Assembly (NCBI RefSeq): GCF_003918875.1
Contig: NW_025767002.1
Coordinates: 1,116,001 to 1,180,000, forward strand
Direction of reading: 5' to 3'
Length of the DNA stretch: 64,000 bases
DNA from: Haliotis rubra
Taxonomy: Eukaryota
A program made the translations under genes and the position numbers. Shown in pieces: positions 38,744 to 63,891 of this stretch. The notes under the pieces are model-generated. The model was not told the DNA's origin and did no database searches. It worked only from the letters and a program-made list of their open reading frames with translations. The stretch's first letter is position 1; each line of letters starts with the position of its first letter.

Positions 38744-40371
38744 AGTGAATTATGTCAACCTGACCTGTTCAGCTGCAGGAATTATGTCAAATGTTGCCTA
38801 CCATAGCCCCAATCTTCAGCTCTGAAAGATTTTACAAGTCCCCCAGCCCATGGACTTCGGTTGAAAATCTTTCGGTTGAAAATCTTTCCAAACCTTTCCA
38901 AATGTTTAAAACAGCTGTATATACTAAAGTGAACAGTAACGTTTGTCACAGTGACAGAGGGGAAGTGACTAACCTCTTAACATTAAAGTACTGTCGGAAA
39001 TAGAAGAAAACTGGGTTTTTTTTTCATATTTATCTCTACAATTTATGTAGTGGATATGTGAAAGTGAAATATCTGATAAACTAAGTTCGGCCTAACTGCA
39101 GTCTCGGTGGTAGGGAGATAGGAAACGTAATAAAAGGACTTTAGTGAGGAGAGATTAGTGCAGAAATGAGCAATGAGGTTTTTTTAGTAAGTCCAAAGCG
39201 ACTTATTTGGAACAGACCATGGCTCTATGCAAATTAGTGTGCAATGATATTGTATTACAAAGGACACTTTTTAAATGCCCATCTTGAAATTAGACTTAGC
39301 TTCATTATAAACGATAGCTGACGTACAAAATAATAACTTTCATGCTGAAACTATTAAGGATGTAGCTACCATGGAGTCTCACTGTCACTGTAAAAAGGAA
39401 CAGATAGGAGGTGTCATCTCAAAAGTAAAACCTGGGCGGGTGTCGCATACGATGGTTGGGGTCGGGCTGGCGGATAGAGATATCAGCTAAGATAAGATAA
39501 TCCTTTAGGAGGCTTATACTGGGGAGGTACACGGCATGTTATAACAATTTACAAATAATATCTGGTCCTGTCGATCTTCGGGTCTTCATGCCACCCATAT
39601 ATTTTGAGATATTTCATACGATGCTTTTCTATGGTTATGAAGTATCATACTCTTTTACATACATTTCTCAACATAAGCTTTATAAAAGAAAGACACGTAA
39701 GATGTTACTCAATAGCTGAGACATATTAAATGCACATGAAAAAGTACAAAATATCTTTGATGACCCCTTGTGCCTGTAGGCAGCACATGTATTTCATGCC
39801 AGGTGAGTCGACGGTCCGCCATATGGCTGGAATATTAATGAGTCGGCGTAAAACTAACATCACTCACTGTTCCCCATAGACACAATACGTGAAGACTTAT
39901 CGGAGTCACAGATACTGTTTGAACACTGTTTAAATGTCACATTCTACGCCATATGGATACACTACATGGCTAATTCGTGAAGTGTGATACCACTCATGTC
40001 TAATATATAAATGTAGATCTTCTTGCTATGTTTCCCCCTGGTCATTATTGTCCCATGATACCAGATCGAGTGGTCAGACGCTGTGCCTTGCTTGTGTGTT
40101 ATTACTCATAGCATCTGACTCAACATCAGCCGTCATATATCTAGAATATTGCTGAGAGCGGCGTAAACCTCAAATCACTCACTCACTCACTCACTCACTC
40201 ACTCACTCATAGCATCTAACTCAACATCAGCCGTCATATATCTAGAATATTGCTGAGAGCAACGAAGTCACAACCATATCTACCAAACACAGTTGTAAAC
40301 AAATAACAAAGACATTGCTTTTGAACTTTAACAAATTTTGTATTGATTATAAAACTAAATACTAAATGACA

Positions 40372-41539
40372 TTAACATTTGTTTCTTCTAAACAGTTTGG
40401 TAAATCGACGAAGGAAAGATCGTGACTTTTTTACATTTTGTTTCTGATTACAATTTTCGATCAAACTAGTTGTGCTGGATGACATGTGTTTCCCAGAAGA
40501 CAGATCATTTTGAGAGAGTTCCTGATGTCTTGTTGACTTATTGTCTTGTTTATGAGACACAATGTGGTCAAAGCACGAGGTCTGTGTAGCCCCTGACCTC
40601 TGAACAAGTCCAACACCCTCTCCATCTCCTGAATGTACACACAGTCTTTCAGCTCTCAACATGTCCACCTCCTTCAACAAGCGGTCCACCTGCTCCCTGA
40701 GGGACACTTTCTCATCTGAGAGTTGTCTGGCTTGTCTTTGAAGATGTTGATTCTCCACTTTCAGACATTTGGAACGGAATCGAGCATCTCGTAGGTCAGC
40801 CCGGATAATGTCCACCTTGGTCAGGGCAGCCGTCAGATGCAATTGGAGGTCAAGCTCATTGACTTGTTGTTTGATCTCTTCACTACAGTCCCAATGGAAT
40901 GGAGGCTGGAGACGAACAGGTCTTGGTTTTATCGCCACGTGTTTGGGAACCATGTCGTGGAACTCTGAAAAAGTCGAATCCAGTATATACTCGATTCAAT
41001 GGCACGTCTTAACATCAGTACATATACATCTACTGTGTTAAATGAATGAACTAGTGGACTGTTAACAATAAATAATTAATTGTTTACTTGAAGTTGCAAG
41101 AATGTAAGAGCTGAACGTATTTAACAACACGCGCACACACGCACACACACACACACACCTGTCGGTTCTGTACGTGCGAAACACTCCGCCACCTCGGAAT
41201 CAAACCCCTCACACTCGGACATGGTCAGACGCCTGGTGACTGGTTTTGGTTTTATTAAGACGTGTTTGGGAACCGCATCATGAAACCCTGAAATACCAAT
41301 ATCTGGATTTAGAATAGTGACACAATTCAATCGAAAAGTGTTAATAATATATCACATTTACATCTGCGTGAACAGCGTGGTAACAAAAGTAGTTTAAAAA
41401 AAGAGAGGTTGTGGAGATGAAAACTATTATCACAAATAACGTCACACTCACCTGTCGGTTCTGTACGTGCAAAGCACTCCGCCACCTCGGGATCAAACCC
41501 CTCACACTCGGACATGGTCAGGCGTCTGGTGACTGGCAT
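40372..41539 (-). CDS. Orphan coiled-coil gene copy 1, intact; exons 41539-41452, 41287-41159, 40964-40372; 269 aa
   Basis: Exons of 88+129+593 = 810 nt, two phase-1 GT-AG introns (CAG|GTGAGT, tttcag acceptors), open frame when spliced. Confidence 0.75.
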
Positions 41540-41617
41540 AATCTTGAGATAATCTCGATAAATGAAGAGCGTACTGCAGTGCTGCTGTAGCTGGCTGAGA
41601 TAATGTCAGACAATGGC

Positions 41618-41627
41618 GTGACGTCAC
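41618..41627. promoter_or_regulatory. Palindromic CRE GTGACGTCAC ~80 bp upstream of the orphan-gene ATG, present in all 7 copies
   Basis: Same motif near 46024, 50251, 52431, 54712, 56862 and 59876. Confidence 0.6.
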
Positions 41628-42535
41628 AATATGAACTAATGATGTCATAGCGACCGTCGAATCGGTAGATTTCGCTGTCATCCGTTCGACGGAAATACAT
41701 GTACCTTCGGAAGAAGTCGGCCTTTTTCGTCTCGAGTGTGTTCTGATTGCTACACATCAGCCGAAACATACCAAGATCATTTGATGTTCATTTTTCTTTG
41801 GTCTAATGTTGATGTTTTTTATGTATTTTGTTATGTAATTCGTTTCCGGAAGGGGCTAGATGAATTGTGAGCCATGTGATACTGTCATCACTTGTGTGAC
41901 ATTTCAGAATTGCAAACACAATATGCTGCACAGGAAAGGAACAAGGAAATCAATTTTTCCGACATATGAGCACAAAGAAATAAGTAAGGATTCATTTCAA
42001 CGGGTGGAGTGAGTGAGTGAGATGGGTTTTCGATGACCAGTGACGACATTGTGATGACGTCGCGGTTTCTACATTGTATAAAAATCGTTACAACATTCCT
42101 ATTTCTGCACACAGTGTAACCAAATTGTGTTTCATTGAACCAAGTTGATTCCATTTCATATTTCAGCAAATTAAAAACGTATAAGAAGGGTCAGTATATG
42201 TTATACGCCTCATTCTGTCTCTTATCTCAGTTTGGAAGGAGAATCATCAGGTTTTCATTTTACATTGTTTTTCTTCATAATTTACGATTAGCGTTGGCCG
42301 CCCATAATTGTAATGCAGTTCAAAGCGGCATACGATAGTACCTATCTGTTGGTAAAGATATTTTAGACTGTTGAAACTATCAGTTCACAAAAATATACAC
42401 AATAATTATATGCAGAAAACGAATGCTATTTACACAATAAAACTGACATGATATAATTCAATTAACCACATAGGTAAAGAGGCTGAATAATTCTAGTTGT
42501 AATCACGTGATGGTGATTCAAAATATTTGTTGCAT

Positions 42536-43160
42536 TCACGAATACTTGATGGTATGAAAGACTGTCGAACTCTGTTTTGAGGGAAGGTAATCGACAGCAG
42601 CGTCCAGAAGGAAGTAGTTCAAAATGGTGAGATCAAATATGTCAACTACCAAATCTAATTTTAGTTGCCTTTGTGACAATCTGGCGCTCATAGATAAAGG
42701 GAATATACTTAAAAGACACCCCAGAAATTTTGCAAGCAGTATTAGCAATTTTGAAAAGCTTGTTTTTGTTGCAATGAGAGACTCCCATACCAACATAGAA
42801 AATTGTAGGTCAACACACTTTGAATAAAGGTTTGATAAAAAACTGTCATTACTGTTTTGTCAATGCCTTGACAATAATAATGTTCAGAATCGGAAATTAG
42901 GCAAGTAACAGTGGCGTCATCTGCGAATTTCACAGTAAGCACGTCATATATTGACAAGTAACAGTCATTAGTATACAAAACGAAGAGTACGGATGAAGGA
43001 ACACAGCCATTTGGTTCTGCAGAAGAGGTTGAGAGAAAAGAAGATTGATGGCCATTTACACTGACATACTGAGTTCTATGTACCCATCTGATAATGTTTT
43101 TATTAAGACCTATATTAAATATATATAGTTTACTCCTCATAAGGTGTGGCTGTATGGTAT
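42536..43160 (-). mobile_element. Internally deleted Rex1/Babar-like LINE reverse-transcriptase fragment
   Basis: RTQYVSVNG...PNGCVPSSVLFVLYTNDC...KFADDATV...FYQTFIQSVLTY...WYGSL. Confidence 0.8.
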
Positions 43161-43376
43161 TAGTTGTTACAATTCTCTACAGATGAGAGTAAATATTATA
43201 CATCGTTTGAAATTTCACTTCTTAAAATGATAAGGTAACTATCTTGACAATTGATAGACATGGAGAAAGATAAAAAAATCAAATGTATGGGCATATCTTG
43301 ATCTGGATAGAGAAAAGAGAAAAATAACCAAATGCCGCCTGTGCGGTATATCACTGCGTTTTGCAGGCAGTACAAG

Positions 43377-43544
43377 AGTGAGTGACTGAGTTTGGTTTTA
43401 CGCCGCTTTTAGCAATATTCCAGCAATATCACGGCGGGGGACACCAGAAATGGGCTTCACACATTGCACCCATGTGGGGAATCGAACCCGGGTCTTCAGC
43501 GTGTCGAGCGGACGCTTTAACCATTAGGCTACCCCACCGCCCCT
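43377..43544 (-). mobile_element. SINE family A, full length
   Basis: TSD ggcagtacaag (43366-43376 and 43545-43555). Confidence 0.92.
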
Positions 43545-43719
43545 GGCAGTACAAGAAGTACGATGAAAAAAACAAGTGTCAAGTAAACATCCGAAAATAC
43601 TGATTCTGACCAATGGGAAATGTTAGTTAGTATATGAAGTCGGAATGAAGTAAGTGTTCACTTGTCTGATCGGAACACATGTCATGCAAGTTACGCTATT
43701 GTTTGCTTGAAAGGTATGA

Positions 43720-43797
43720 ATTTCGAGTACTCGGGTCCGAGTCGAGTCTCACCCCTCGAGTACTCGAGTCCAAGAAAATGGACTCGTTGAAGCCCTA
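43720..43797. mobile_element. Single hAT-like terminus
   Basis: Ends in agcccta (TAGGGCT on the - strand) with palindromic cgagtactcg sub-terminal repeats; no partner end found. Confidence 0.45.
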
Positions 43798-44446
43798 GTT
43801 GAAACTATGAAACTTTTATGGTGCATTAGAGTCTGTCTAATATTTTTACCCAGAATTGAAAGATGCTCTTTTGCAAACGTCCTTGCACCTTGACTACAGT
43901 CGCCCCGCTACTTAAACGCGAAGTCAAAACCGCGTTTAATCACAGCCTTTCCTTAGTTTGTACGATTCTTTTCCTATTCTGACATATAAGAGGCGACTGA
44001 CCGGACTGGGTGGTCAGGCTCACTGACTTGGTGGACACATGTCACCGTATATCAATTGTCTGGTCCAGACTCTATTATTTACAGACCGCCGCCATATAGA
44101 TGGAATACTGCTGAGTGCGGCGTAAAACAAACAAACAAATCGTTCTGATGGTTATAGTTGTTTTTAAACTGTATTATATAGTAATTAAGTGGACAATCTA
44201 GGGGAAGTAATCCCGTTAGCCTTGACCGATAATGATGACATGCTGATGAGACTTACTTCCCCTGAGCAGAAACAAAGATGGTGTCGAACAGGGAATCTCG
44301 TCTCTATTCGGTTCGTGGCTAATTCGTGAAGTGACATGTCTAATATATAAATGTAGATCTTCTTGCTATGTTTTCCCCTGGTCATTATTGTCCCATGATA
44401 ACAGATCGAGTGGTCAGACTCTGTTCCTTGCTTGTGTGTTATTGTC

Positions 44447-44846
44447 ATAGCATCTGACTCAACATCAGCCGTCATATATCTAGAATATTGCTGAGAGCGG
44501 CGTAAAACTCAACTCACTCACTCACTCACTCACTCATAGCATCTGACTCAACATCAGCCGTCATATATCTAGAATATTGCTAAGAGCGGCGTAAAACTCA
44601 ACTCACTCACTCACTCACTCATAGCATCTGACTCAACATCAGCCGTCATATATCTAGAATATTGCTGAGAGCGGCGTAAAACTCAACTCACTCACTCACT
44701 CACTCACTCACTCACTCATAACATCTGACTCAACATCAGCCGTCATATATCTAGAATATTGCTGAGAGCGGCGTAAAACTCAACTCACTCACTCTCTCAC
44801 TCACTCACTCATAACATCTGACTCAACATCAGCCGTCACATATCTA
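44447..44846 (+). repeat. Tandem amplification of a SINE 3' tail (~86-97-bp unit, ~4.5 copies)
   Basis: catagcatctgactcaacatcagccg...gcggcgtaaaactcaa(ctca)n repeated. Confidence 0.9.
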
Positions 44847-44966
44847 GTAAAAGACAACGAAGTCACAACCATATCTACCAAACACACAGTTGTACAAATA
44901 ACAAAGACATTGCTTTGGAACTTTAACAAATTTTGTATTGATCATAAAACTAACTACTAAATGACA

Positions 44967-45946
44967 TTAACATTTGTTTCTTCTAAACAGTTTGGTAAAT
45001 CGACGAAGGAAAGATCTTGACTTTTTTACATTTTGTTTCTGATCACAATTTTCGATCAAACTGGTTGTGCTGGATGACATGTGTTTCTTTGAGAAGACAG
45101 ACCATTTTGAGAGAGTTCCTGATGTCTTGTTGACTTATTGTCTTGTTTAGGCGAAACAATGTGGTCAAAGCACGAGGTCTGTGTAGCTCCTGACCTCTGA
45201 ACAAGTCCAACACCCTCTCCAGCTCCAGAATGTACACACAATCTTTCAGCTCTCAACATGTCCACCTCCTTCAACAAGCGGTCCACCTGCTCCCTGAGGG
45301 AGACTTTCTCATTCAACAGTTGTCTGGCTTGTCTCTGAAGATGTTGATTCTCCACTTTCAGACATTTGGAACGGAGTCGAGCATCTTGGAGGTCAGCCCG
45401 GATAATGTCCACCTTGGTCAGGGCAGCCGTCAGATGCAATTGGAGGTCAAGCTCCTTCACTTCTTGTTTGATCTCTTCACTACAGTCCCAATGGAATGGA
45501 GGCTGGAGACGAACAGGTCTTGGTTTTATCGTCACGTGTTTGGGAACCATGTCGTGGAACTCTGAAAACACATAAGTCGAATCTAGTATGTACTCAGTTC
45601 AATGTCAAGTCAGGCACATATATATACATGTACATGTATATGCTGTGTTTAATGGTGGGACTATTAACATTTAATCAAGAATATTATTTGTATACTTGAA
45701 GTTCCAAGAATGTGTGTTTCTTTAAGTGGCATTTAGGAGCTGGTATAATTAAAAGGAAAACTTTGCCTGATAACGGTGCAATAAAGAAGCTGTCTATCCA
45801 ACAAAAAACAAGTGTTCCTCTTCTATGTGAGAGTTGAACGGAATAACAAAACACACACCTTCCAGTTCTCTGTGTGCGAAACACTCGGCCACCTCGGAAT
45901 CAAACCCCTCACACTCAGACATGGTCAGACGTCTGGCGACTGCCAT
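44967..45946 (-). pseudogene. Orphan gene copy 2; two exons (45946-45859, 45561-44967); +2 frameshift near 45090
   Basis: One repeat unit missing relative to copy 7; last exon 595 nt rather than 593. Could be an assembly error. Confidence 0.6.
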
Positions 45947-46474
45947 AATCTTTAGATATCTCGATAAATGAAGAGCGTGATTCAGTGCTGCTGTAGCTGG
46001 CTGAGACAATGTCCGACAATGGCGTGACGTCACAATATCACCTAATGACGTCATAGCAATGCTTTGTCGGTAGATTTCGCTGTCCGTGCATCGGAAACGC
46101 CTTGGAAGAAGTCGGCATGTTTTGTTTCAAGTGTGTTCTGATTTCTCCACATAGCTGAATAGAAACATACCCTGAACATTTGATTTCTTTGTCCTTTTGG
46201 GCTCGTATTAATATTTTTTTGTGTGTTTTCGAATGTAACTCGTTTCTGGAAAGGGTCAGTTGAATTGTGAGCCATGTGATACTGTCATGTTGTGGCATTT
46301 CCTCTCAGAATTGCAAACATAATATGCTACACAGGAAATGATTAAAATGGCACAAATAAATAGAATCCATTGGCACAGGTAGATTGGAGTGAGTAAGTGA
46401 GTAATGAGCGGCTGAGTGAGTTACTGAATGAGGAAAGAAGTGAGTGAGATGTTTCAACCCCTCACGGTGCCTGG

Positions 46475-46820
46475 ATCGCCTCCCGTGGTGTAGTGGTTAG
46501 AGTGTCCGCCCGGAGAGCGGAAGGTCGCGGGTTCGATCCCCGACCGCGTCATACCAAAAGACGTTAAAATATGGTACTTGTTGGTCCCTGCCTGGCGCTC
46601 GTCATTAATGGGTACAACAAGGACTGGTCGGCTCGGAGTCAGTATAATGTGTCTGAGTGGGGTATTCATGCTTCACTGCGGCATGGTATTTCAGTGGGCT
46701 AGCACTATAAAACCAGCTTCAGTCTGGGCTAGTACAAGCAGCATCACCTACACATACACACGCATGCACGTCGTCATATGAGCGAAATATTCTCCAGCGC
46801 GACGTTGAACCCAATTTCAC
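46475..46820 (+). mobile_element. SINE family B
   Basis: TSD ctcacggtgcctgg. Confidence 0.92.
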
Positions 46821-47867
46821 CTCACGGTGCCTGGTCGTCAGCTGGCTTTGTGTGCCGCTCAGTCATGACACTGTGATGACGTCGCCTTTCAAACACTTAA
46901 ACATTGTATGAAAATAGTGGTACAACGCTCTTATTTCTGCGCATAGTGTAACCAAGTTGGGTGTCATTCAACTGAGTTGATTGCCTTCTTCCTTATTTCA
47001 GCAAATCAAGAACCTATATGCATCACCTAGCTATCGGTGAAAGTATATGTTATATTTCGCTTACTCAGTCTTTTGTCTCAATTTGAAGAGAGATAAATAT
47101 GGAAGGGGTTTTCTTTTTACTTACCAATCGTTTTTCTTTATAATTTACAATTAGACCGTCCATAATTGCAATGCTGTTCAAAGCGGTGCTAACCTCTCAG
47201 CGCTCAAACTGTTGAAACTATTACCACAAAGCCAGTTTGTTATTTTCACCTCTTTTACACAACTCTCATCCTCGATAATCTCCAGGGTATACGTTACGAT
47301 CACTCGGCTCGGGTGACACTGCCACAAAGAGACGCACATCAGACTGTATTACCCTCGAGAGAAGCATACAACTTATAGTGACATTGTACTCGATTATTGA
47401 TATATATATGTGATGTCTTGAGGACTGTACGCCAGAATCTTGAGAACGACCGCAAGAGCAAAGTTAACAGCACTACAAACTGCATAATATTTTCCCACGT
47501 TTGCTTCTATCAATAAACTAGTTATTCGTAGTATTCCTAAAGGTGTCAATTTATCCAAATAATCAGTTAAATTGAGGTGTGGACATGTTTATGTGGTTCC
47601 TGTGGTTAATAGTAACAGAATATGACAAATATGGGGTGTTGCGATACTTTTTCCATGGGTATATTTGGTTCAGATGAACAATTCTCAATTTGCCTATGTT
47701 AACGCCACGGGTTGGCAGGATACGCTCATTTTTCCAGTCATCACTATTTTTTATTAGTGAATCGCAAACATGTTTCTGGTGGAGTTGACATCATACAGTT
47801 GATTCCGCTTTTAGCAGGGAATTGTCACTATTTCATGTGATGGCGTGAGATATAAAAACTGGATTTT

Positions 47868-48320
47868 CATGACCCAGGGTCGTGATGTAGATGAAATGTT
47901 CTTGATTGAAGACAGTATATGTCTGAAACATGGACCCAGCCTTGGATTTACAAGGGTCGTGATGTAGATGAAATGTTCTTGATTGAAGACAGTATATGTC
48001 TGAAACATGGACCCAGCCTTGGATTTACAAGGGTCGTGATGTAGATGAAATGTTCTTGACTGAAGACAGTATATGTCTGAAACATGGACCCAGCCTTGGA
48101 TTTACAAGGGTCGTGATGTAGATGAAATGTTCTTGATTGAAGACAGTATATGTCTGAAACATGGACCCAGCCTTGGATTTACAAGGGTCGTGATGTAAAT
48201 GAAATGTTCTTGATTGAAGACAGTGTATGTCTGAAACATGGACCCAGCCTCGGATTTACAAGGGTCGTGATGTAGATGAAATGCTCTTGATTGAAGGCAG
48301 AATGATATGCCTGTAACATG
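47868..48320 (+). repeat. 77-bp minisatellite, ~6 copies
   Basis: catggacccagcc at 47929, 48006 and onward. Confidence 0.95.
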
Positions 48321-48967
48321 GATTGCAGCATGTGGCTTTGTTGAAGGTGAGATTTTGTTGAGGGGCCTACTTAAAAAATCGTCAACAGTTGGAATTTGAC
48401 GACTACAAAGATAATCTTTGGGTCTGTATAAGTACAGGAGCTTGGCTTAATGGTTGTTTTTTCGGGTTTTTGTTTAAAAAAACAACAATACTTGCCTGGT
48501 ATATCAAGTTTCACGAAGACCATTGTCATAAAATGGTCAGAAATTGTTTATAATAGTATTATAACGGTGAGTCTCATTACAAACTATACCTGGAGCACAT
48601 TTGATCAATTTGACTCTCTAAAACTGTGTTGTCAGCATTATTGGGGGCGAGTGATGTGAGTTTAGTTTTGCGCCGCACTCAGCAATATTCTAATGTCTAA
48701 TATATAAATGTAGATCTTCTTGCTATGTTTTCCCCTGGTCATTATTGTTCCATACTACCAGATCGAGTGGTCAGACGCTGTGCCTTGCGTGTGTGTTATT
48801 GTTCATAGCATCTGACTCAACATCAGCCGTCATATATCTAGAATATTGCTGAGAGCGGCGTAAGACAACGAAGTCACAGCCATATCTACCAAATACAGTT
48901 GTAAACAAATAACAAAGACATTGCTTTTGAACTTTAACAAATTGTGTATTGATTATAAAACTAAATA

Positions 48968-50172
48968 CTAACTTACATTAACATTTGTTTCTTGTAAACA
49001 GTTTGGTAAATCGACGAAGGAAAGATCTTGACTTTTTTTTACATTTTGTTTCTGATTACAATTTTCGATCAAACTAGTTCTGCTGGATGACATATGCTTC
49101 TTTGATGAGAGGCCATTTTGAGAGAGTTCCTGATGTCTTGTTGACTTATTGTCTTGTTTAGGAGACACAATGTGGTCAAGGCACGAGGTCTGTGTAGCCC
49201 CTGACCTCTGAACAAGTCCAACACCCTCTCCATCTCCAGAATGTACACACAGTCTTTCAGCTCTCAACATGTCCACCTCCTTCAACAAGCGGTCCACCTG
49301 CTCCCTGAGGGCCCCTCTCTCATCCGAGAGTTGTCTGGCTTGTCTTTGAAGATGTTGATTCTCCACTTTCAGCCATTTTGAACGGAATCGAGTATCTTGG
49401 AGGTCAGCCCTGATAATGTCCACCTTGGTCAGGGCAGCCGTCAGATTCAATTGGAGGTCAAGCTCCTTCACTTCTTGTTTGATCTCTTCACTATAGTCCC
49501 AATGGAATGGAGGCTGGGGACGAACAGGTCTTGGTTTTATCGTCACGTGTTTGGGAACCATGTCGTGGAACTCTGAAAAAGTCGAATCCAGTATATACTC
49601 GATTCAAGGGCACGTCTTAACATCAGTACATATACATCTACTGTGTTTAATGAATGAACTAGTGGACTGTTAACAATAAATAATTAATTGTTTACTTTGA
49701 GTTGCAAGAATGTAAGAGCTGAACGTATTTAACAACACGCGCGCGCACGCACGCACGCACACACACACACACACGCACACCTGTCGGTTCTGTACGTGCG
49801 AAACACTCCGCCACCTCGGAATCAAACCCCTCACACTCGGACACGGTCAGACGTCTGGTGACTGGTTTTGGTTTTATTAAGACGTGTTTGGGAACCGCAT
49901 CATGAATCTCTGAAATACCAATAGCAGGCTTAAGAATAGAGACACAATTCAATTGAAAAGTGTTAATAATGTATCGCATTTACATCTACGTCATCAGCGT
50001 GGTAACAAAAAGTAGTTTCCTCTCACATCCTATTCTTATGAAACAGAGGAGGTTGGTTATTATCACAAATAACGGCACACTCGCCTGTCGGTTCTGTACG
50101 TGCAAAGCACTCCGCCACCTCGGGATCAAACCCCTCACACTCGGACATTGTCAGACGTCTGGCGACTGGCAT
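48968..50172 (-). CDS. Orphan gene copy 3; exons 50172-50085, 49909-49781, 49572-48968; GC donor; +2 homopolymer shift alters the C-terminus
   Basis: A8 instead of A6 at ~49033-49040 replaces RSFLRRFTKLFRRNKC with QDLSFVDLPNCLQETNVNVS. Confidence 0.6.
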
Positions 50173-51158
50173 AATCTTGAGATAATCTCGATAAATGAAG
50201 AGCGTGATTCAGTGCTGCTGTAGCTGGCTGAGACAATGTCAGACAATGGCGTGACGTCACAATATCACCTAATGATGTCATAGCGACCGTCGAATCGGTA
50301 GATTTCGCTGTCATCCGTTCGACGGAAATACCTTTGGAAGATGTCGGCCTTTTTCGTCTCGAGTGTGTTCTGATTGGTACACATCAGCCGAAAGATACCA
50401 AAGTCATTTGATGTTTGTTTTTCCTTTGGGCTAATGTTGATGGTTTTTACGTATTTTGTTATGTAATTCGTTTCCCTGGTTTGTACGATTCTTTTTCCTA
50501 TTCTGACATATAAGAGGCGACTGACCGGACTGGGTGGTCAGGCTCACTGACTTGGTGGACACATGTCATCGTATGTCAATTGTCTGGTCCAGATTCTATT
50601 ATTTACAGACCGCCGTCATATAGATGGAATACTGCAGATTGCAGCGTAAAACAAACAAACAAATCGTTCTGATGGTTATAGTTGTTCTTAAAACTGTATT
50701 ATAAAGACGTAATTAAGTGGACAATCTAGGGGAAGTAATCCCGTTAGCCTTGACCGATAATGATGACATGCTGATGAGACTTACTTCCCCTGAGCAGAAA
50801 CAAAGATGGTGTCGAACAGGGGAATCTCATCTTTATTCGGTTCGTGGCTAATTCGTGAAGTGTGATACCACTCATGTCTAATATATAAATGTAGATCTTC
50901 TTGCTATGTTTTCCCCTGGTCATTACTGTCCCATGATACCAGATCGAGTGGTCAGACGCTGTGCCTTGCGTGTGTGTTATTGTTCATAGCATCTGACTCA
51001 ACATCAGCCGTCATATATCTAGAATATTGCTGAGAGCGGCGTAAGACAACGAAGTCACAACCATATCTACCAAATACAGTTGTAAACAAATAACAAAGAC
51101 ATTGCTTTTAAACTTTAACAAATTGTGTATTGATTATAAAACTAAATACTAAATGACA

Positions 51159-52352
51159 TTAACATTTGTTTCTTCTAAACAGTTTGGTAAATCGACGAAG
51201 GAAAGATCGTGACTTTTTTACATTTTGTTTCTGATTACAATTTTCGATCAAACTAGTTCTGCTGGATGACATATGCTTCTTTGATGAGAGGCCATTTTGA
51301 GAGAGTTCCTGATGTCTTGTTGACTTATTGTCTTGTTTAGGAGACACAATGTGGTCAAAGCACGAGGTCTGTGTAGCCCCTGACCTCTGAACAAGTCCAA
51401 CACCCTCTCCATCTCCAGAATGTACACACAGTCTTTCAGCTCTCAACATGTCCACCTCCTTCAACAAGCGGTCCACCTGCTCCCTGAGGGAGACTTTCTC
51501 ATCCGAGAGTTGTCTGGCTTGTCTTTGAAGATGTTGATTCTCCACTTTCAGACATTTTGAACGGAATCGAGCATCTTGGAGGTCAGCCCTGATAATGTCC
51601 ACCTTGGTCAGGGCAGCCGTCAGATGCAATTGGAGGTCAAGCTCCTTCACTTCTTGTTTGATCTCTTCACTACAGTCCCAATGGAATGGAGGCTGGAGAC
51701 GAACAGGTCTTGGTTTTATCGTCACGTGTTTGGGAACCATGTCGTGGAACTCTGAAAAAGTCGAATCCAGTATATACTCGATTCAATGGCACGTCTTAAC
51801 ATCAGTACATATACATCTACTGTGTTAAATGAATGAACTAGTGGACTGTTAACAATAAATAATTAATTGTTTACTTGAAGTTGCAAGAATGTAAGAGCTG
51901 AACGTATTTAACAACACGCGCACGCACGCACACACACACACACGCACACCTGTCGGTTCTGTACGTGCGAAACACTCCGCCACCTCGGAATCAAACCCCT
52001 CACACTCGGACGCGGTCAGACGTCTGGTGACTGGTTTTGGTTTTATTAAGACTTGTTTGGGAACCGCAACATTAAACCCTGAAATACCAATATCTGTATT
52101 TAGAGTAGAGACACAATTCAATTGAAAAGTGTTAATAATGTATCGCATTTACATCTACGTCATCAGCGTGGTAACAAAAGTAGTTTCCTCTGAAATCCTA
52201 TTCTTATGAAACAGAGGAGGTTGTGGAGATGAAATCTATTATCACAAATAACGGCACACTCGCCTGTCGGTTCTGTACGTGCAAAGCACTCCGCCACCTC
52301 GGGATCAAACCCCCTCACACTCGGACATTGTCAGACGTCTGGCGACTGGCAT
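51159..52352 (-). pseudogene. Orphan gene copy 4; exons 52352-52264, 52078-51950, 51751-51159; +1 frameshift in exon 1
   Basis: C5 instead of C4 at ~52310-52314 makes exon 1 89 nt; exons 2 and 3 are intact. Possibly a sequencing error. Confidence 0.55.
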
Positions 52353-53443
52353 AATCTTGAGATAATCTCGATAAATGAAGAGCGTGATTCAGTGCTGCTG
52401 TAGCTGGCTGAGACAATGTCAGACAATGGCGTGACGTCACAATATCACCTAATGATGTCATAGCGACCGTCGAATCGGTAGATTTCGCTGTCATCCGTTC
52501 GACGGAAATACATGTACCTTCGGAAGAAGTCGGCCTTTTTCGTCTCGAGTGTGTTCTGACACATCAGCCACATACCAAGATCAGATGTTCCTTTGGTCTA
52601 ATGTTGATGATACCAAGGGGCTAGATCATGTTGATGTTTGACATTTTTACAAACACAATATGCTGCACAGGAAAGGAACAAGGGAAATGTTGATGGTTTC
52701 ATAACGTATTTTGTTATGTAATTGGGTTTCCAGTGACTTGTGATGTTTGTACGATTCTTTTCCTATTCTGACATATAAGAGGCGACTGACCGGACTGGGT
52801 GGTCAGGCTCACTGACTTAATTTACGATTAGTGGACACATGTCATCGTATGTCAATTGTCTGGTCCAGATATCTATTATTGAAACTTACAGACCGCCGTC
52901 ATATAGATGGAATACTGCTTGATTGCACAGCGTAAAACAAACAAGTCAAATCGTTCTGATGGTTATAGTTGTTCTTAAAACTGTATTATAAAGACGTAAT
53001 TAAGTGGACAATCTAGGGGAAGTAATCCCGTTAGCCTTGACCGATAATGATGACATGCTGATGAGACTTACTTCCCCTGAGCAGAAACAAAGATGGTGTC
53101 GAACAGGGAATCTCGTCTTTATTCGGTTCGTGGCTAATTCGTGAAGTGTGATACCACTCATGTCTAATATATAAATGTAGATCTTCTTGCTATGTTTTCC
53201 CCTGGTCATTACTGTCCCATGATACCAGATCGAGTGGTCAGACTCTGTGCCTTGCTTGTGTGTTATTGTCATAACATCTGACTCAACATCAGCCGTCATA
53301 TATCTAGAATATTGCTGAGAGCGGCGTAAGACAACGAAGTCACAACCATATCTACCAAACACAGTTGTAAACAAATAACAAAGACATTGCTTTTGAACTT
53401 TAACAAATTGTGTATTGATTATAAAACTAAATACTAAATGACA

Positions 53444-54633
53444 TTAACATTTGTTTCTTCTAAACAGTTTGGTAAATCGACGAAGGAAAGATCGTGACTT
53501 TTTTACATTTTGTTTCTGATTACAATTTTCGATCAAACTGGTTCTGCTGGATGACATATGCTTCTTTGATGAGAGACCATTTTGAGAGAGTTCCTGATGT
53601 CTTGTTGACTTATTGTCTTGTTTAGGAGACACAAGTGTGGTCAAAGCACGAGGTCTGTGTAGCCCCTGACCTCTGAACAAGTCCAACACCCTCTCCATCT
53701 CCAGAATGTACACACAGTCTTTCAGCTCTCAACATGTCCACCTCCTTCAACAAGCGGTCCACCTGCTCCCTGAGGGAGACTTTCTCATCCGAGAGTTGTC
53801 TGGCTTGTCTTTGAAGATGTTGATTCTCCACTTTCAGACATTTTGAACGGAATCGAGTATCTTGGAGGTCAGCCCTGATAATGTCCACCTTGGTCAGGGC
53901 AGCCGTCAGATGCAATTGGAGGTCAAGCTCCTTCACTTCTTGTTTGATCTCTTCACTACAGTCCCAATGGAATGGAGGCTGGAGACGAACAGGTCTTGGT
54001 TTTATCGTCACGTGTTTGGGAACCATGTCGTGGAACTCTGAAAAAGTCGAATCCAGTATATACTCGATTCAATGGCACGTCTTAACATCAGTACATATAC
54101 ATCTACTGTGTTAAATGAATGAACTAGTGGACTGTTAACAATAAATAATTAATTGTTTACTTGAAGTTGCAAGAATGTAAGAGCTGAACGTATTTAACAA
54201 CACGCGCACGCACGCACACACACACGCACACCTGTCGGTTCTGTACGTGCGAAACACTCCGCCACCTCGGAATCAAACCCCTCACACTCGGACGCGGTCA
54301 GACGTCTGGTGACTGGTTTTGGTTTTATTAAGACGTGTTTGGGAACCGCATCATGAATCTCTGAAATACCAATATCAGGATTTAGAATAGAGACACAATT
54401 CAATTGAAAAGTGTTAATAATGTATCGCATTTACATCTACGTCATCAGCGTGGTAACAAAAGTAGTTTCCTCTGAAATCCTATTCTTATGAAACAGAGGA
54501 GGTTGTGGAGATGAAAACTATTATCACAAATAACGGCACACTCGCCTGTCGGTTCTGTACGTGCAAAGCACTCCGCCACCTCGGGATCAAACCCCTCACA
54601 CTCGGACATTGTCAGACGTCTGGCGACTGGCAT
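53444..54633 (-). pseudogene. Orphan gene copy 5; exons 54633-54546, 54360-54232, 54037-53444; +1 frameshift at ~53635
   Basis: acaagtgtgg versus acaatgtgg in the other copies. Confidence 0.6.
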
Positions 54634-55615
54634 AATCTTGAGATAATCTCGATAAATGAAGAGCGTGATTCAGTGCTGCTGTAGCTGGCTGAGACAATGT
54701 CAGACAATGGCGTGACGTCACAATATCACCTAATGATGTCATAGCGACCGTCGAATCGGTAGATTTCGCTGTCATCCGTTCGACGGAAATACCTTTGGAA
54801 GATGTCGGCCTTTTTCGTCTCGAGTGTGTTCTGATTGGTACACATCAGCCGAAAGATACCAAAATCATTTGATGTTCTTTTTCCTTTGGGCGAATGTTGA
54901 TGGTTTTATGTATTTTGTTATGTAATTCGTTTCCCTGGTTTGTACGATTCTTTTTCCTATTCTGACATATAAGAGGCGACTGACCGGACTGGGTGGTCAG
55001 GCTCACTGACTTGGTGGACACATGTCATCGTATGTCAATTGTCTGGTCCAGACTCTATTATTTACAGACCGCCGTCATATAGATGGAATACTGCAGATTG
55101 CGGCGTAAAACAAACAAACAAATCGTTCTGATGGTTATAGTTGTTCTTAAAACTGTATTATATAGAAGTAATTAAGTGGACAATCTAGGGGAAGTAATCC
55201 CGTTAGCCTTGACCGATAATGATGACATGCTGATGAGACTTACTTCCCCTGAGCAGAAACAAAGATGGTGTCGAACAGGGAATCTCGTCTTTATTCGGTT
55301 CGTGGCTAATTCGTGAAGTGTGATACCACTCATGTCTAATATATAAATGTAGATCTTCTTGCTATGTTTTCCCTGGTCATTACTGTCCCATGATACCAGA
55401 TCGAGTGGTCAGACTCTGTGCCTTGCTTGTGTGTTATTGTTCATAGCATCTGACTCAACATCAGCCGTCATATATCTAGAATATTGCTGAGAGCGGCGTA
55501 AGACAACGAAGTCACAACCATATCTACCAAACACAGTTGTAAACAAATAACAAAGACATTGCTTTTGAACTTTAACAAATTGTGTATTGATTATAAAACT
55601 AAATACTAAATGACA

Positions 55616-56783
55616 TTAACATTTGTTTCTTCTAAACAGTTTGGTAAATCGACGAAGGAAAGATCGTGACTTTTTTACATTTTGTTTCTGATTACAATTT
55701 TCGATCAAACTAGTTGTGCTGGATGACATGTGTTTCCCAGAAGACAGATCATTTTGAGAGAGTTCCTGATGTCTTGTTGACTTATTGTCTTGTTTAGGAG
55801 ACACAATGTGGTCAAAGCACGAGGTCTGTGTAGCCCCTGACCTCTGAACAAGTCCAACACCCTCTCCATCTCCTGAATGTACACACAGTCTTTCAGCTCT
55901 CAACATGTCCACCTCCTTCAACAAGCGGTCCACCTGCTCCCTGAGGGACACTTTCTCATCTGAGAGTTGTCTGGCTTGTCTTTGAAGATGTTGATTCTCC
56001 ACTTTCAGACATTTGGAACGGAATCGAGCATCTCGTAGGTCAGCCCGGATAATGTCCACCTTGGTCAGGGCAGCCGTCAGATGCAATTGGAGCTCAAGCT
56101 CATTGACTTGTTGTTTGATCTCTTCACTACAGTCCCAATGGAATGGAGGCTGGAGACGAACAGGTCTTGGTTTTATCGTCACGTGTTTGGGAACCATGTC
56201 GTGGAACTCTGAAAAAGTCGAATCCAGTATATACTCGATTCAATGGCACGTCTTAACATCAGTCCATATACATCTACTCTGTTAAATGAATGAAATAGTG
56301 GACTGTTAACAATAAATAATAAATTGTTTACTTGAGGTTTCAAGAATGTAAGAGCTCAACGTATTTAACAACACGCGCACACGCACGCACACACACACAC
56401 ACCTGTCGGTTCTGTACGTGCGAAACACTCCGCCACCTCGGAATCAAACCCCTCACACTCGGACATGGTCAGACGCCTGGTGACTGGTTTTGGTTTTATT
56501 AAGACGTGTTTGGGAACCGCATCATGAAACCCTGAAATACCAATATCTGGATTTAGAATAGTGACACAATTCAATCGAAAAGTGTTAATAATATATCACA
56601 TTTACATCTGCGTGAACAGCGTGGTAACAAAAGTAGTTTAAAAAAAGAGAGGTTGTGGAGATGAAAACTATTATCACAAATAACGTCACACTCGCCTGTC
56701 GGTTCTGTAAGTGCAAAGCACTCCGCCACCTCGGGATCAAACCCCTCACACTCGGACATGGTCAGGCACCTGGCGACTGGCAT
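55616..56783 (-). CDS. Orphan gene copy 6, intact; exons 56783-56696, 56531-56403, 56208-55616; GC-AG intron 1
   Basis: 88+129+593 nt with an open spliced frame. Confidence 0.72.
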
Positions 56784-58456
56784 AATCTTGAGATAATCTC
56801 GATAAATGAAGAGCGTGATTCAGTGCTACTGTAGCAGGCTGAGATAATGTCAGACAATGGCGTGACGTCACAATATGAACTAATGATGTCATAGCGACCG
56901 TCGAATCGGTAGATTTCGCTGTCATCCGTTCGACGGAAATACATGTACCTTCGGAAGAAGTCGGCCTTTTTCGTCTCGAGTGTGTTCTGATTGCTACACA
57001 TCAGCCGAAACATACCAAGATCATTTGATGTTCATTTTTCTTTGGTCTAATGTTGATGTTTTTTATGTATTTTGTTATGTAATTCGTTTCCGGAAGGGGC
57101 TAGATGAATTGTGAGCCATGTGATACTGTCATCACTTGTGTGACATTTCAGAATTGCAAACACAATATGCTGCACAGGAAAGGAACAAGGAAATCGATTT
57201 TTCCGACATATGAGCACAAAGAAATAAGTAAGGATTCATTTCAACGGGTGGAGTGAGTGAGTGAGATGGGTTTTCGATGACCAGTGACGACATTGTGATG
57301 ACGTCGCGGTTTCTACATTGTATAAAAATCGTTACAACATTCCTATTTCTGCACACAGTGTAACCAAATTGTGTTTCATTGAACCAAGTTGATTCCATTT
57401 CATATTTCAGCAAATTAAAACGTATAAGAAGGGTCAGTATATGTTATACGCCTCATTCTGTCTCTTATCTCAGTTTGGAAGGAGAATCATCAGGTTTTCA
57501 TTTTACATTGTATTTCTTCATAATTTACGATTAGCGTTGGCCGCCCATAATTGTAATGCAGTTCAAAGCGGCATACGATAGTACCTATCTGTTGGTAAAG
57601 ATATTTTAGACTGTTGAAACTATGAAACTTTTATGGTGCATCAGAGTCTGTCTAATATGTTTACCCAGAATTGAAAGATCCTATTTTGCAAACGTCCTTG
57701 CACCTTGACTACAGTCGCCCCGCTACTTAAACGCAAACGAAGTCAAGACCACTTTTAGTCACAGCCTTTCCTGAGTTTGTACGATTCTCTTTCCTATTCT
57801 GACATATAAGAGGCGACTGACCGGACTGGGTGGTCAGGCTCACTGACTTGGTGGACACATGTCATCGTATGTCAATTGTCTGGTCCAGACTCTATTATTT
57901 ACAGACCGCCGTCATATAGATGGAATACTGCAGATTGCGGCGTAAAACAAACAAACAAATCGTTCTGATGGTTATAGTTGTTCTTAAAACTGTATTATAT
58001 AGAAGTAATTAAGTGGACAATCTAGGGGAAGTAATCCCGTTAGCCTTGACCGATAATGATGACATGCTGATGAGACTTACTTCCCCTGAGCAGAAACAAA
58101 GATGGTGTCGAACAGGGAATCTCGTCTTTATTCGGTTCGTGGCTAATTCGTGAAGTGTGATACCACTCATGTCTAATATATAAATGTAGATCTTCTTGCT
58201 ATGTTTCCCCTGGTCATTATTGTCCCATGATACCAGATCGAGTGGTCAGACTCTGTGCCTTGCGTGTGTGTTATTGTTCATAGCATCTGACTCAACATCA
58301 GCCGTCATATATCTAGAATATTGCTGAGAGCGGCGTAAGACAACGAAGTCACAACCATATCTACCAAACACAATTGTAAACAAATAACAAAGACATTGCT
58401 TTTGAACTTTAACAAATTAATTGTGTATTGATCATAAAACGAAATACTAAATGACA

Positions 58457-59798: not shown

Positions 59799-60319
59799 AA
59801 TCTTTAGATATCTCGATAAATGAAGAGCGTGATTCAGTGCTGCTGTAGCTGGCTGAGACAATGTCCGACAATGGCGTGACGTCACAATATCACCTAATGA
59901 CGTCATAGCAATGCTTTGTCGGTAGATTTCGCTGTCCGTGCATCGGAAACGCCTTGGAAGAAGTCGGCATGTTTTGTTTCAAGTGTGTTCTGATTTCTCC
60001 ACATAGCTGAATAGAAACATACCCTGAACATTTGATTTCTTTGTCCTTTTGGGCTCGTATTAATATTTTTGTGTGTGTTTTCGAATGTAACTCGTTTCTG
60101 GAAAGGGTCAGTTGAATTGTGAGCCATGTGATACTGTCATGTTGTGGCATTTCAGAATTGCAAACATAATATGCTACACAGGAAATGATTAAAATGGCAC
60201 AAATAAATAGAATCCATTGGCACAGGTAGATTGAGTGAGTAAGTGAGTAATGAGCGGCTGAGTGAGTTACTGAATGAGGAAAGAAGTGAGTGAGATGTTT
60301 CAACCCTCACGGTGCCTGG

Positions 60320-60665
60320 GATCGCCTCCGTGGTGTAGTGGTTAGAGTGTCCGCCCGGAGAGCGGAAGGTCGCGGGTTCGATCCCCGACCGCGTCATACC
60401 AAAAGACGTTAAAATATGGTACTTGTTGGTCCCTGCCTGGCGCTCGTCATTAATGGGTACAACAAGGACTGGTCGGCTCGGAGTCAGTATAATGTGTCTG
60501 AGTGGGGTATTCATGCTTCACTGCGGCATGGTATTTCAGTGGGCTAGCACTATAAAACCAGCTTCAGTCTGGGCTAGTACAAGCAGCATCACCTACACAT
60601 ACACACGCATGCACGTCGTCATATGAGCGAAATATTCTCCAGCGCGACGTTGAACCCAATTTCAC
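60320..60665 (+). mobile_element. SINE family B (segmental duplicate of 46475-46820)
   Basis: Same TSD and flanks. Confidence 0.92.
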
Positions 60666-61712
60666 CTCACGGTGCCTGGTCGTCAGCTGGCTTTGTGTGC
60701 CGCTCAGTCATGACACTGTGATGACGTCGCCTTTCAAACACTTAAACATTGTATGAAAATAGTGGTACAACGCTCTTATTTCTGCGCATAGTGTAACCAA
60801 GTTGGGTGTCATTCAACTGAGTTGATTGCCTTCTTCCTTATTTCAGCAAATCAAGAACCTATATGCATCACCTAGCTATCGGTGAAAGTATATGTTATAT
60901 TTCGCTTACTCAGTCTTTTGTCTCAATTTGAAGAGAGATAAATATGGAAGGGGTTTTCTTTTTACTTACCAATCGTTTTTCTTTATAATTTACAATTAGA
61001 CCGTCCATAATTGCAATGCTGTTCAAAGCGGTGCTAACCTCTCAGCGCTCAAACTGTTGAAACTATTACCACAAAGCCAGTTTGTTATTTTCACCTCTTT
61101 TACACAACTCTCATCCTCGATAATCTCCAGGGTATACGTTACGATCACTCGGCTCGGGTGACACTGCCACAAAGAGACGCACATCAGACTGTATTACCCT
61201 CGAGAGAAGCATACAACTTATAGTGACATTGTACTCGATTATTGATATATATATGTGATGTCTTGAGGACTGTACGCCAGAATCTTGAGAACGACCGCAA
61301 GAGCAAAGTTAACAGCACTACAAACTGCATAATATTTTCCCACGTTTGCTTCTATCAATAAACTAGTTATTCGTAGCATTCCTAAAGGTGTCAATTTATC
61401 CAAATAATCAGTTAAATTGAGGTGTGGACATGTTTATGTGGTTCCTGTGGTTAATAGTAACAGAATATGACAAATATGGGGTGTTGCGATACTTTTTCCA
61501 TGGGTATATTTGGTTCAGGTGAACAATTCTCAATTTGCCTATGTTAACGCCACGGGTTGGCAGGATACGCTCATTTTTCCCATCATCACTATTTTTTATT
61601 AGTGAATCGCAAACATGTTTCTGGTGGAGTTGACATCATACAGTTGATTCCGCTTTTAGCAGGGAATTGTCACTATTTCATGTGATGGCGTGAGATATAA
61701 AAACTGGATTTT

Positions 61713-62180
61713 CATGACCCAGACTCGGATTTACAAGGGTCGTGATGTAGATGAAATGTTCTTGATTGAAGACAGTATATGTCTGAAACATGGACCCAGC
61801 CTTGGATTTACAAGGGTCGTGATGTAGATGAAATGTTCTTGATTGAAGACAGTATATGTCTGAAACATGGACCCAGCCTTGGATTTACAAGGGTCGTGAT
61901 GTAGATGAAATGTTCTTGACTGAAGACAGTATATGTCTGAAACATGGACCCAGCCTTGGATTTACAAGGGTCGTGATGTAGATGAAATGTTCTTGATTGA
62001 AGACAGTATATGTCTGAAACATGGACCCAGCCTTGGATTTACAAGGGTCGTGATGTAGATGAAATGTTCTTGATTGAAGACAGTGTATGTCTGAAACATG
62101 GACCCAGCCTCGGATTTACAAGGGTCGTGATGTAGATGAAATGCTCTTGATTGAAGGCAGAATGATATGCCTGTAACATG
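61713..62180 (+). repeat. 77-bp minisatellite (duplicate of 47868-48320)
   Basis: Same unit and similar copy number. Confidence 0.95.
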
Positions 62181-62518
62181 GATTGCAGCATGTGGCTTTG
62201 TTGAAGGTGAGATTTTGTTGAGGGGCCTACTTAAAAAATCGTCAACAGTTGGAATTTGACGACTACAAAGATAATCTTTGGGTCTGTATAAGTACAGGAG
62301 CTTGGCTTAATGGTTGTTTTTTCGGGTTTTTGTTTAATAAAACAACAATACTTGCCTGGTATATCAAGTTTCACGAAGACCATTGTCATAAAATGGTCAG
62401 AAATTGTTTATAATAGTATTATAACGTTGAGTCTCATTACAAACTATACCTGGAGCACATTTGATCAATTTGACTCTCTAAAACTGTGTTGTCAGCATTA
62501 TTGGGGCAAGTGATGTGA

Positions 62519-62751
62519 GTTTAGTTTTGCGCCGCACTCAGCAATATTCCAGCTATATGGCGGCGGTCTGTAAATAATCAAGTACGGACCAGACAATCCA
62601 GTGATCAACAGCATGAGCATCGATCTGCGCAATTGGGAACCGATGACATGTGTCAACCAAGCCAGCGAGCCTGACCACCCGATCCCGTTAGTCGCCTCTT
62701 ACGACAAGCATGGGTTACTGAAGGTTCATTCTAACCCGGACCTTCACGGGT
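62519..62751 (-). mobile_element. SINE-like family C, full length
   Basis: TSD gcaagtgatgtga (62506-62518 and 62753-62765). Confidence 0.92.
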
Positions 62752-63669: not shown

Positions 63670-63891
63670 TCAGTTAAATCTTTTCATCTTTTTATCTTTC
63701 AATTCCCTATAGAGCTGTACAGCTTTCTCCCTCTCATGATCCATAATGTGTTGCTGTGCCATAGAGAGGTTTTTCCTCTTGACAGTCTGCCCCAACTCAC
63801 GCCGTCCCCCCTGGCCACCGGGGGGGGTCTGTTGACTGTAGCTGGAGTTGCTTGTGAAGACCTCTTTCAGCAACAGGGACTTCTTTCCTGG
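63670..63891 (-). CDS. Probable terminal coding exon of an unidentified gene entering from the right (PGKKSLLLKEVF...EREKAVQLYRELKDKKMKRFN*)
   Basis: gtttcccattccag acceptor, 73 open codons plus stop, protein-like composition with a basic helical end. Confidence 0.5.
   Translation of the reverse strand, partial: PGKKSLLLKEVFTSNSSYSQQTPPGGQGGRRELGQTVKRKNLSMAQQHIMDHEREKAVQLYRELKDKKMKRFN

What the first reader, a model, noticed from the sequence alone, without database searches (positions are those of the whole stretch)
39967..62549. Seven-copy, recently amplified orphan gene array convergent with an oocyte-type H1 gene
Seen: splicing the fragmentary ORFs at phase-1 introns gives a 269-aa protein (88+129+593 nt) that is intact in copies 1, 6 and 7. 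Exon lengths and splice phases are conserved even where introns have diverged (copy 1 versus 7), which argues for a real gene. I recognise no family and see no transposase or RT motifs. Inference: a lineage-specific, copy-number-variable gene family. Its position beside a germline histone and its CRE promoter fit a germline, reproduction or genetic-conflict role, but nothing here proves that.
Basis: partly seen in the sequence, partly recalled or inferred. Interest (0 to 1): 0.85.

Follow-up and report, generated by a model that had tools for sequence, protein, structure and literature searches.

The report
Abalone twin-CRE zipper gene array
This is a real but unstudied gene family found only in abalones, present here as seven tandem copies, whose proteins carry a leucine zipper with no DNA-binding part and whose promoters keep a pair of cAMP-response elements, which suggests (untested) a signal-induced brake on stress-type transcription factors rather than a germline gene tied to the neighbouring histone.

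Summary
Observation confirmed: seven minus-strand copies; the 88+129+593 nt model gives 269 aa, intact in copies 1, 6 (GC donor) and 7. It is not an orphan of this genome: RefSeq has 70-81% identical 'uncharacterized' models in four Haliotis species, tandem in long-read assemblies, plus older paralogues (27-57%); none was found outside Haliotis. The array lies between CCDC137 and an oocyte-type H1, as in H. asinina (two copies); other members sit beside unrelated genes, so the H1 link looks incidental. dN/dS is about 0.57, lowest (0.2) in the C-terminal basic amphipathic helix. New here: a 50-bp promoter island, two CREs 21 bp apart plus ATTGT, is kept in nearly all members examined, including four of five distant paralogues. 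The protein has a six-leucine zipper (weak Fos/ATF4 likeness, not significant) and no bZIP basic region. Best guess, about 40%: a CREB/ATF-induced zipper that binds and diverts bZIP factors. A spermatid or adaptor role remains open. Two scan notes on other DNA of this genome may concern paralogues (not verified); the bZIP lead came from a note on this window.

The parts
40372..41539 (-). copy 1, intact: exons 41539-41452, 41287-41159, 40964-40372; 269 aa
44967..45946 (-). copy 2: two exons (45946-45859, 45561-44967); one 43-aa unit lost between the 94-bp repeats; 2-nt insertion late in the last exon removes the C-terminal helix
48978..50172 (-). copy 3: exons 50172-50085, 49909-49781, 49572-48978; GC donor; +2 A in an A-run gives a 273-aa product with another tail; 8 private non-synonymous changes, 0 synonymous
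51159..52352 (-). copy 4: exons 52352-52264, 52078-51950, 51751-51159; +1 G in a G-run of exon 1 (early frameshift)
53444..54633 (-). copy 5: exons 54633-54546, 54360-54232, 54037-53444; +1 C in exon 3, stop after the zipper
55616..56783 (-). copy 6, open frame (GC-AG intron 1): exons 56783-56696, 56531-56403, 56208-55616; 269 aa
58457..59798 (-). copy 7, intact: exons 59798-59711, 59468-59340, 59049-58457; 269 aa; older 5' half and introns, exon 3 close to copy 1
41598..41647 (-). promoter island of copy 1: CRE-like site + CRE 21 bp apart (41647-41619), then ATTGT/CATT motifs; the same pair at 46025-46053, 50252-50280, 52432-52460, 54713-54741, 56863-56891, 59877-59905
41150..41536 (-). 94-bp internal repeat (41443-41536 and 41150-41243) that made the symmetric 129-nt exon 2; encodes the repeated N-terminal motif
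40639..40764 (-). leucine zipper, residues 140-181 (Leu at d in six heptads; a positions N, A, K, V, V), preceded in register by four more amphipathic heptads where a bZIP has its basic region
40375..40431 (-). C-terminal basic amphipathic helix (residues 251-269), the most constrained region (omega 0.2), kept in all distant paralogues
48680..48700 (.). duplication junction: the spacer upstream of copy 2 breaks inside a SINE and joins the 3' flank of copy 3 with no long homology
32281..37576 (+). flanking gene: B4/H1oo-type linker histone, exons 32281-32886 and 37517-37576, 221 aa, convergent with the array
63670..64000 (-). flanking gene: 3' end of CCDC137 (by 87-88% DNA match to the CCDC137 gene called in H. 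asinina and H. cracherodii)
42745..43176 (-). decayed reverse-transcriptase (LINE) fragment in the spacer between copies 1 and 2; single insertion, not part of the unit

Best explanation
Shown or near-shown (about 0.95): a protein-coding gene family restricted to Haliotis, evolving by birth and death with unequal crossing-over and gene conversion; this window holds the locus between CCDC137 and H1oo, expanded from about two to seven copies. Strongly inferred (about 0.8): transcription is driven by CREB/ATF-family factors through a tandem pair of CREs next to the start site. Inferred mechanism (about 0.4): a signal (cAMP, calcium or stress kinases) switches the genes on; the protein forms parallel dimers through its leucine zipper, with itself, with paralogues or with Fos/ATF/C-EBP-type bZIP factors; having heptads instead of a basic region it cannot bind DNA, and its C-terminal basic amphipathic helix holds the dimer at a membrane or another compartment, so it damps the response that induced it. 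The repeated N-terminal motif (with an RRxT kinase site in this subfamily) would be a regulated docking site, and copy number would set the dose.
For: Orthologous RefSeq models of the same length and exon layout in four species; pN below pS, Fisher p 1e-3 to 6e-6 in most comparisons; omega 0.57 overall and 0.2 in the tail. Promoter island 63-78% identical to four distant paralogues on other chromosomes against 21-40% in its flanks; the pattern occurs 7 times in the window against 0 expected. Continuous helix 56-140 at pLDDT 90-98; Leu at six d positions, invariant Asn at a, Lys at a; best PDB matches of the zipper are c-Fos (E 0.23) and ATF4 (0.72), with Fos, C/EBP and GCN4 high in the profile search; Pfam bZIP_1 matches only its zipper half (positions 26-62, E 0.011).
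Against: All bZIP matches are below significance and generic coiled coils score as well (M protein, kinesin light chain, ZapB, designed peptides). No bZIP remnant (basic region, activation domain) was found to show descent. The zipper is the least constrained region (omega 0.73). The extension is neutral, not acidic, in this subfamily. One paralogue (P0037) lacks the island. No expression, localisation or binding data were obtained; CREs also drive spermatid and housekeeping genes.
Confidence: 0.4

Rival explanations
1. Germ-cell (most likely spermatid) gene family: CREM/CREB plus a Sox factor switch it on in the gonad, and the protein is a membrane-associated coiled-coil structural or adaptor protein; expansion reflects dosage or sexual selection.
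For: TATA-less promoter with CREs and a conserved ATTGT (Sox-like) motif; in mammals CREM-tau and SOX30 drive spermatid genes (own knowledge, a lead only); fast evolution (about 30% of residues differ between species, against 10 non-synonymous codons in 201 for the neighbouring H1oo exon) and repeated expansion are typical of reproductive genes.
Against: H1oo adjacency holds for one of at least five loci; the CPE-like motif in the 3' UTR is not conserved in H. asinina; no signal peptide, so unlike lysin, sp18 or VERL; no omega above 1.
Confidence: 0.3
2. Inducible cytoplasmic adaptor with no bZIP partner: a homodimeric coiled-coil stalk anchored by the amphipathic tail that presents the proline-rich N-terminal motif to a kinase, ligase or trafficking protein in stress or immune signalling.
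For: The tail is the most constrained part; the N-terminal motif (EV..F..EF..P..I(K/R)P.P.R..PPF.WD) survives at 27% overall identity and is duplicated as a symmetric exon; weak Pfam and fold matches are to adaptor coils (JIP, Rab11-FIP, RILP-like).
Against: Those matches are also below threshold; the a/d pattern is that of a transcription-factor-type zipper.
Confidence: 0.25
3. The array is mostly decaying duplicate DNA or partly an assembly artefact (two haplotypes stacked; frameshifts are long-read errors).
For: Blocks around copies 1/6 and 2/7 differ by 1.4-1.7%, the same as the 1.3-1.5% heterozygosity reported for H. rubra (PMC6774278); four of seven copies are frameshifted, mostly in simple runs; copy 3 has 8:0 private non-synonymous to synonymous changes.
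Against: Unique junctions without long homology, single-copy flanking genes on both sides, mosaic site patterns, and tandem arrays at the same locus in H. cracherodii. This rival can affect the count of seven, not the reality of the family.
Confidence: 0.05

Closest known systems
RefSeq 'uncharacterized' Haliotis proteins (e.g. XP_067672066.1 H. asinina, LOC124284101 H. rubra, LOC124151758 H. rufescens, XP_071107613.1 H. cracherodii)
   Same: Same family: 70-81% identity over exon 3, same three exons, same promoter island; XP_067672066.1 is the positional orthologue.
   Different: Auto-annotated only; no paper found; the proteins of this window itself did not appear in the database; copy number differs (2 in H. 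asinina, 7 here).
bZIP transcription factors (c-Fos, ATF4, C/EBP)
   Same: Leucine heptad repeat with Asn and Lys at a positions; CRE-containing promoter as in immediate-early genes.
   Different: No basic region or N-x7-R motif; Pfam thresholds not reached; extra heptads, N-terminal repeat and amphipathic tail are not bZIP features.
ICER (inducible cAMP early repressor), CHOP and zipper-only inhibitors such as plant LITTLE ZIPPER microProteins and engineered A-ZIPs (own knowledge)
   Same: Proposed logic: a CRE-induced or zipper-only protein that blocks its partners by dimerising; ICER also has tandem CRE-like sites in its promoter.
   Different: ICER and CHOP keep a basic region; ZPR proteins are small and plant-specific; A-ZIP extensions are strongly acidic; no homology to any of them and no binding shown.
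Taxon-restricted tandem families under birth-and-death evolution (e.g. rodent Speer/Takusan coiled-coil family)
   Same: Lineage-restricted coiled-coil genes, repeated expansion, pseudogenes, gene conversion.
   Different: No sequence relation (Takusan appeared only as a 0.88 feature-level lead); tissue unknown.

Membership tests
bZIP transcription factor | leucine zipper of 4 or more heptads | tested here: met
   six d-position leucines, residues 140-175; helix in the model
bZIP transcription factor | basic DNA-binding region with N-x7-R/K in fixed spacing to the zipper | tested here: not met
   residues 100-139 have 7 basic and 7 acidic residues and continue the heptad repeat; bZIP_1 matches profile positions 26-62 only, below gathering
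bZIP-derived dominant-negative (ICER/CHOP/microProtein type) | homology of the zipper to a bZIP family | tested here: inconclusive
   c-Fos best PDB hit at E 0.23, 0.05 with a profile; generic coils score alike
bZIP-derived dominant-negative (ICER/CHOP/microProtein type) | heterodimerises with bZIP factors and blocks DNA binding | not testable with these tools
   needs binding and reporter assays; complexes could not be modelled
CREB/ATF target gene | conserved CRE within about 200 bp of the start site | tested here: met
   tandem CRE pair footprint in all copies, orthologues and 4 of 5 distant paralogues; start site itself not mapped
CREB/ATF target gene | CREB occupancy or cAMP inducibility | not testable with these tools
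   no reads or ChIP data (closed)
Transposable element or viral ORF | transposase, RT, gag or ORF1 homology; terminal repeats; dispersed copies | tested here: not met
   no Pfam, viral-structure or viral-contig match; spliced, syntenic across species
Taxon-restricted gene family under birth-and-death evolution | no homologue outside the clade | tested here: met
   only Haliotis hits (one unrelated repeat protein at E 2e-4); a full-library profile search could not be repeated, so very remote mollusc relatives are not excluded
Taxon-restricted gene family under birth-and-death evolution | independent gains and losses, pseudogenes, purifying selection on intact copies | tested here: met
Abalone gamete-recognition proteins (lysin, sp18, VERL) | secreted protein with signal peptide; positive selection | tested here: not met
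   no hydrophobic leader in any member; omega below 1 in all regions
B4/H1oo oocyte linker histone (neighbour gene) | globular domain closest to B4/H1.8; intron; poly(A) type | tested here: met
   protein B4 E 3.5e-15 against 1e-5 or worse for other H1s; 4.6-kb intron; oocyte expression not tested

The most novel reading that the evidence does not exclude
Abalones evolved their own multi-copy family of CRE-induced zipper proteins in which the bZIP basic region is replaced by extra heptads (a natural A-ZIP) and a membrane-binding tail sequesters Fos/ATF-type partners, with copy number, an optional 43-aa exon and tail-less copies tuning the feedback on cAMP or stress responses.
Probability: 0.2. 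Interest if true: 0.75.

Novelty: new member of a known kind. Interest (0 to 1): 0.45.

Why it matters
It turns a set of anonymous RefSeq models into one defined abalone-specific family with a shared, deeply conserved promoter signal and a clear three-part protein layout, which can be tested directly with existing RNA-seq of heat, infection, gonad and larval samples. If the feedback reading holds, it would be a natural zipper-only inhibitor of stress transcription factors in an animal, with copy-number variation in a farmed genus where heat and disease tolerance matter. If not, it is one more fast-evolving taxon-restricted family.

Tried and rejected
Following the operators' note, the joined spliced model was not sent to any search tool: exons were searched by reference and RefSeq homologues served as full-length queries; N stretches were left alone. 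Pfam on exons and homologues: only sub-threshold coiled-coil hits. ESM Atlas by features and by fold: nothing convincing. BFVD and viral contigs: nothing. N-terminal motif against PDB: nothing; it does not fold alone. Rfam: nothing. Literature searches on LOC and XP identifiers and on descriptions: nothing on this family; two reference papers on zipper rules were not held, so those rules are own knowledge. Rejected: TE origin; a shared promoter or functional link with H1oo; a 'broken ATF4 basic region' (the RFR look-alike is one residue out of register by eye, and most members have RLR or other residues); a conserved CPE in the 3' UTR; an importin-binding motif (no support found). The window does not overlap the fetched part of the H. 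rubra scaffold that holds the RefSeq copies; those belong to the folliculin-linked subfamily.
Full report
Observation. Self-comparison shows seven related units between 39967 and 62549, all on the minus strand. Splicing 41539-41452, 41287-41159 and 40964-40372 gives 269 aa with phase-1 introns. Copies 6 and 7 have the same exon lengths and open frames; copy 6, like 3-5, has a GC donor in intron 1. Copies 2-5 each have one small insertion: +TC, +AA in an A-run, +G in a G-run, +C. Copy 2 has lost one 43-codon unit between the two 94-bp repeats that make up most of exons 1 and 2. The joined model was only translated in scripts; searches were run exon by exon.

What it is. Exon 3 finds twelve RefSeq clusters, all Haliotis (H. 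asinina, rubra, rufescens, cracherodii), 70-81% identical, mostly 263-275 aa, all 'uncharacterized'. Their genes have the same 88 and 129 nt exons and lie in tandem. RefSeq lists isoforms of 232, 275 and 318 aa that differ by the 43-aa unit; alternative isoforms in that pipeline rest on RNA alignments (own knowledge), which is indirect evidence of expression, though some models join neighbouring copies. An exhaustive search adds older one-unit paralogues at 43-50% and two deeper ones (P0037, P0039; about 27% to each other), again only Haliotis, on other chromosomes; a profile search found nothing outside the genus. Other agents' notes call this genome H. rubra; I could not verify that. The window's copies group with H. 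asinina P0001/P0002 (100/99), whereas the RefSeq H. rubra copies group with H. asinina P0009/P0011 at a separate folliculin-linked locus, which is compatible with it.

Neighbourhood. The array is complete in the window: the B4/H1oo-type histone (best PDB match protein B4, E 3.5e-15) is downstream and convergent, and the 3' end of CCDC137 is upstream. H. asinina has the same order with two copies, one broken; H. cracherodii has at least three next to CCDC137. Other members lie by folliculin, aquaporins, a P450 or a cyclophilin. The H1 neighbour therefore marks one locus and says little about function.

History of the array. Copies 1 and 6 differ by 0.5% in exon 3, copies 4 and 5 by 0.5%. Copies 2 and 7 differ from the rest by about 30% in introns and 25% in distal promoter, yet only 3-5% in exon 3. 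Since dS to H. asinina is 0.24, the 2/7 lineage is old and its last exon was probably homogenised by conversion (inference). The 1/6 and 2/7 blocks are 98.3-98.6% identical, which equals the heterozygosity reported for the H. rubra assembly animal, 1.3-1.5% (PMC6774278), so stacked haplotypes cannot be fully excluded; a junction inside a SINE with no long homology and single flanking genes argue for a real duplication. That assembly was built from Nanopore reads with short-read polishing, so homopolymer frameshifts could be errors if the window comes from it.

Selection. Synonymous change exceeds non-synonymous change between copies and species (c1-c7 p 0.001; c1-H. asinina p 1.5e-5; one comparison p 0.1). 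A codon model on 16 exon-3 sequences gives omega 0.57 (log-likelihood 11.6 better than omega 1, kappa fixed in the null), with 0.73 in the zipper and 0.21 in the last 19 residues. The gene is functional but fast-evolving; there is no regional sign of positive selection.

Promoter. Every copy has a CRE-like site and a perfect CRE 21 bp apart, at about -108 and -87 from the ATG. The same pair, with ATTGT five bases after the second CRE, precedes nearly all orthologues (decayed in the broken H. asinina copy, second site lost in one H. rubra copy) and four of five distant paralogues, 114-413 bp from their ATG. The 50-bp island is 63-78% identical without gaps, its flanks 21-40%. This footprint is the strongest clue to function and points to CREB/ATF control; inducibility is not shown.

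Protein. N-terminal: one to three copies of a motif conserved down to the deepest paralogues, with no fold or family match. Middle: one long helix, ten heptads in register, the last six with Leu at d and N, A, K, V, V at a. Its best PDB matches are c-Fos and ATF4, and Fos, C/EBP and GCN4 rank high with a profile, but E-values are 0.05-0.7 and unrelated coils score alike. There is no basic region, so it is not a bZIP factor. Then a disordered linker and a basic amphipathic helix (charge +3 to +9, high hydrophobic moment) in all members. No signal peptide. The bZIP lead came from scan note s1-329569; tested here, the zipper likeness is real but weak and the 'broken basic region' is not supported.

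How it most likely works. Shown: gene, array, purifying selection, promoter footprint, zipper without basic region, constrained tail. Inferred: induction through the CRE pair; dimerisation by the zipper; tethering by the tail. The reading that joins these best is a feedback inhibitor of CRE/AP-1-type factors, in logic like ICER, CHOP or zipper-only microProteins (own knowledge), at about 40%. A spermatid coiled-coil protein (30%) or an inducible adaptor without bZIP partner (25%) fit nearly as well. Decay or artefact (5%) concerns the copy count only.

Novelty and verdict. The genes are auto-annotated in four species but no paper on them was found. As a kind, it is a taxon-restricted birth-and-death family; the family definition, two-subfamily history and twin-CRE island appear undescribed. 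Interest 0.45; 0.75 if the natural zipper-inhibitor reading proves true.

Noticed in passing
window 44967-54633: Copies 2, 3 and 5 keep the N-terminal motif and zipper but lose the conserved C-terminal helix through last-exon frameshifts, which should escape nonsense-mediated decay; tail-less models also exist in H. rubra (P0012) and H. rufescens (P0033). They may be decay, sequence errors or untethered variants.
   Followed up: partly
window 41150-41536; L001: The exon-2 repeat has been overwritten by the exon-1 repeat in copies 1, 3-6 and, with other diagnostic bases, in H. rufescens (92-94% within-gene identity against 77-88% in copy 7, H. asinina and H. rubra B-type): repeated conversion within the gene.
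   Followed up: yes
window 41598-41612: ATTGT five bases after the second CRE is invariant in 12 promoters, followed by a CATT(G) motif; it could be a Sox site or core-promoter element.
   Followed up: partly
window 47876-48322 and 61716-62182: 77-bp minisatellite (about 6 units) duplicated with the spacer upstream of copies 2 and 7.
   Followed up: no
window 44445-44847: 85-97-bp tandem repeat built from a SINE tail plus TCAC microsatellite downstream of copy 2.
   Followed up: no
window 37576-37650: H1oo 3' UTR has TTTTAT and AATAAA close together, as expected for a maternal mRNA under cytoplasmic polyadenylation control.
   Followed up: no
L002 6425-7599: The second H. asinina copy at this locus has a TT donor and an in-frame stop and has lost both CREs: a pseudogene losing promoter and frame together.
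   Followed up: partly
L001 10001-18260: The RefSeq gene LOC124151758 spans two neighbouring copies, and P0018 fuses parts of two; isoform calls in this family may reflect reads mis-mapped among near-identical copies.
   Followed up: partly
L009 2320-5672; L011: The folliculin-linked subfamily lies as a divergent (head-to-head) pair in H. asinina and H. rubra, with extra broken exon-3 pieces in H. rubra.
   Followed up: no
window 1-31000: No clear gene found; mostly SINEs and minisatellites (27, 32, 51, 20, 60 bp units and an ACT run with N stretches, which were left untouched).
   Followed up: partly
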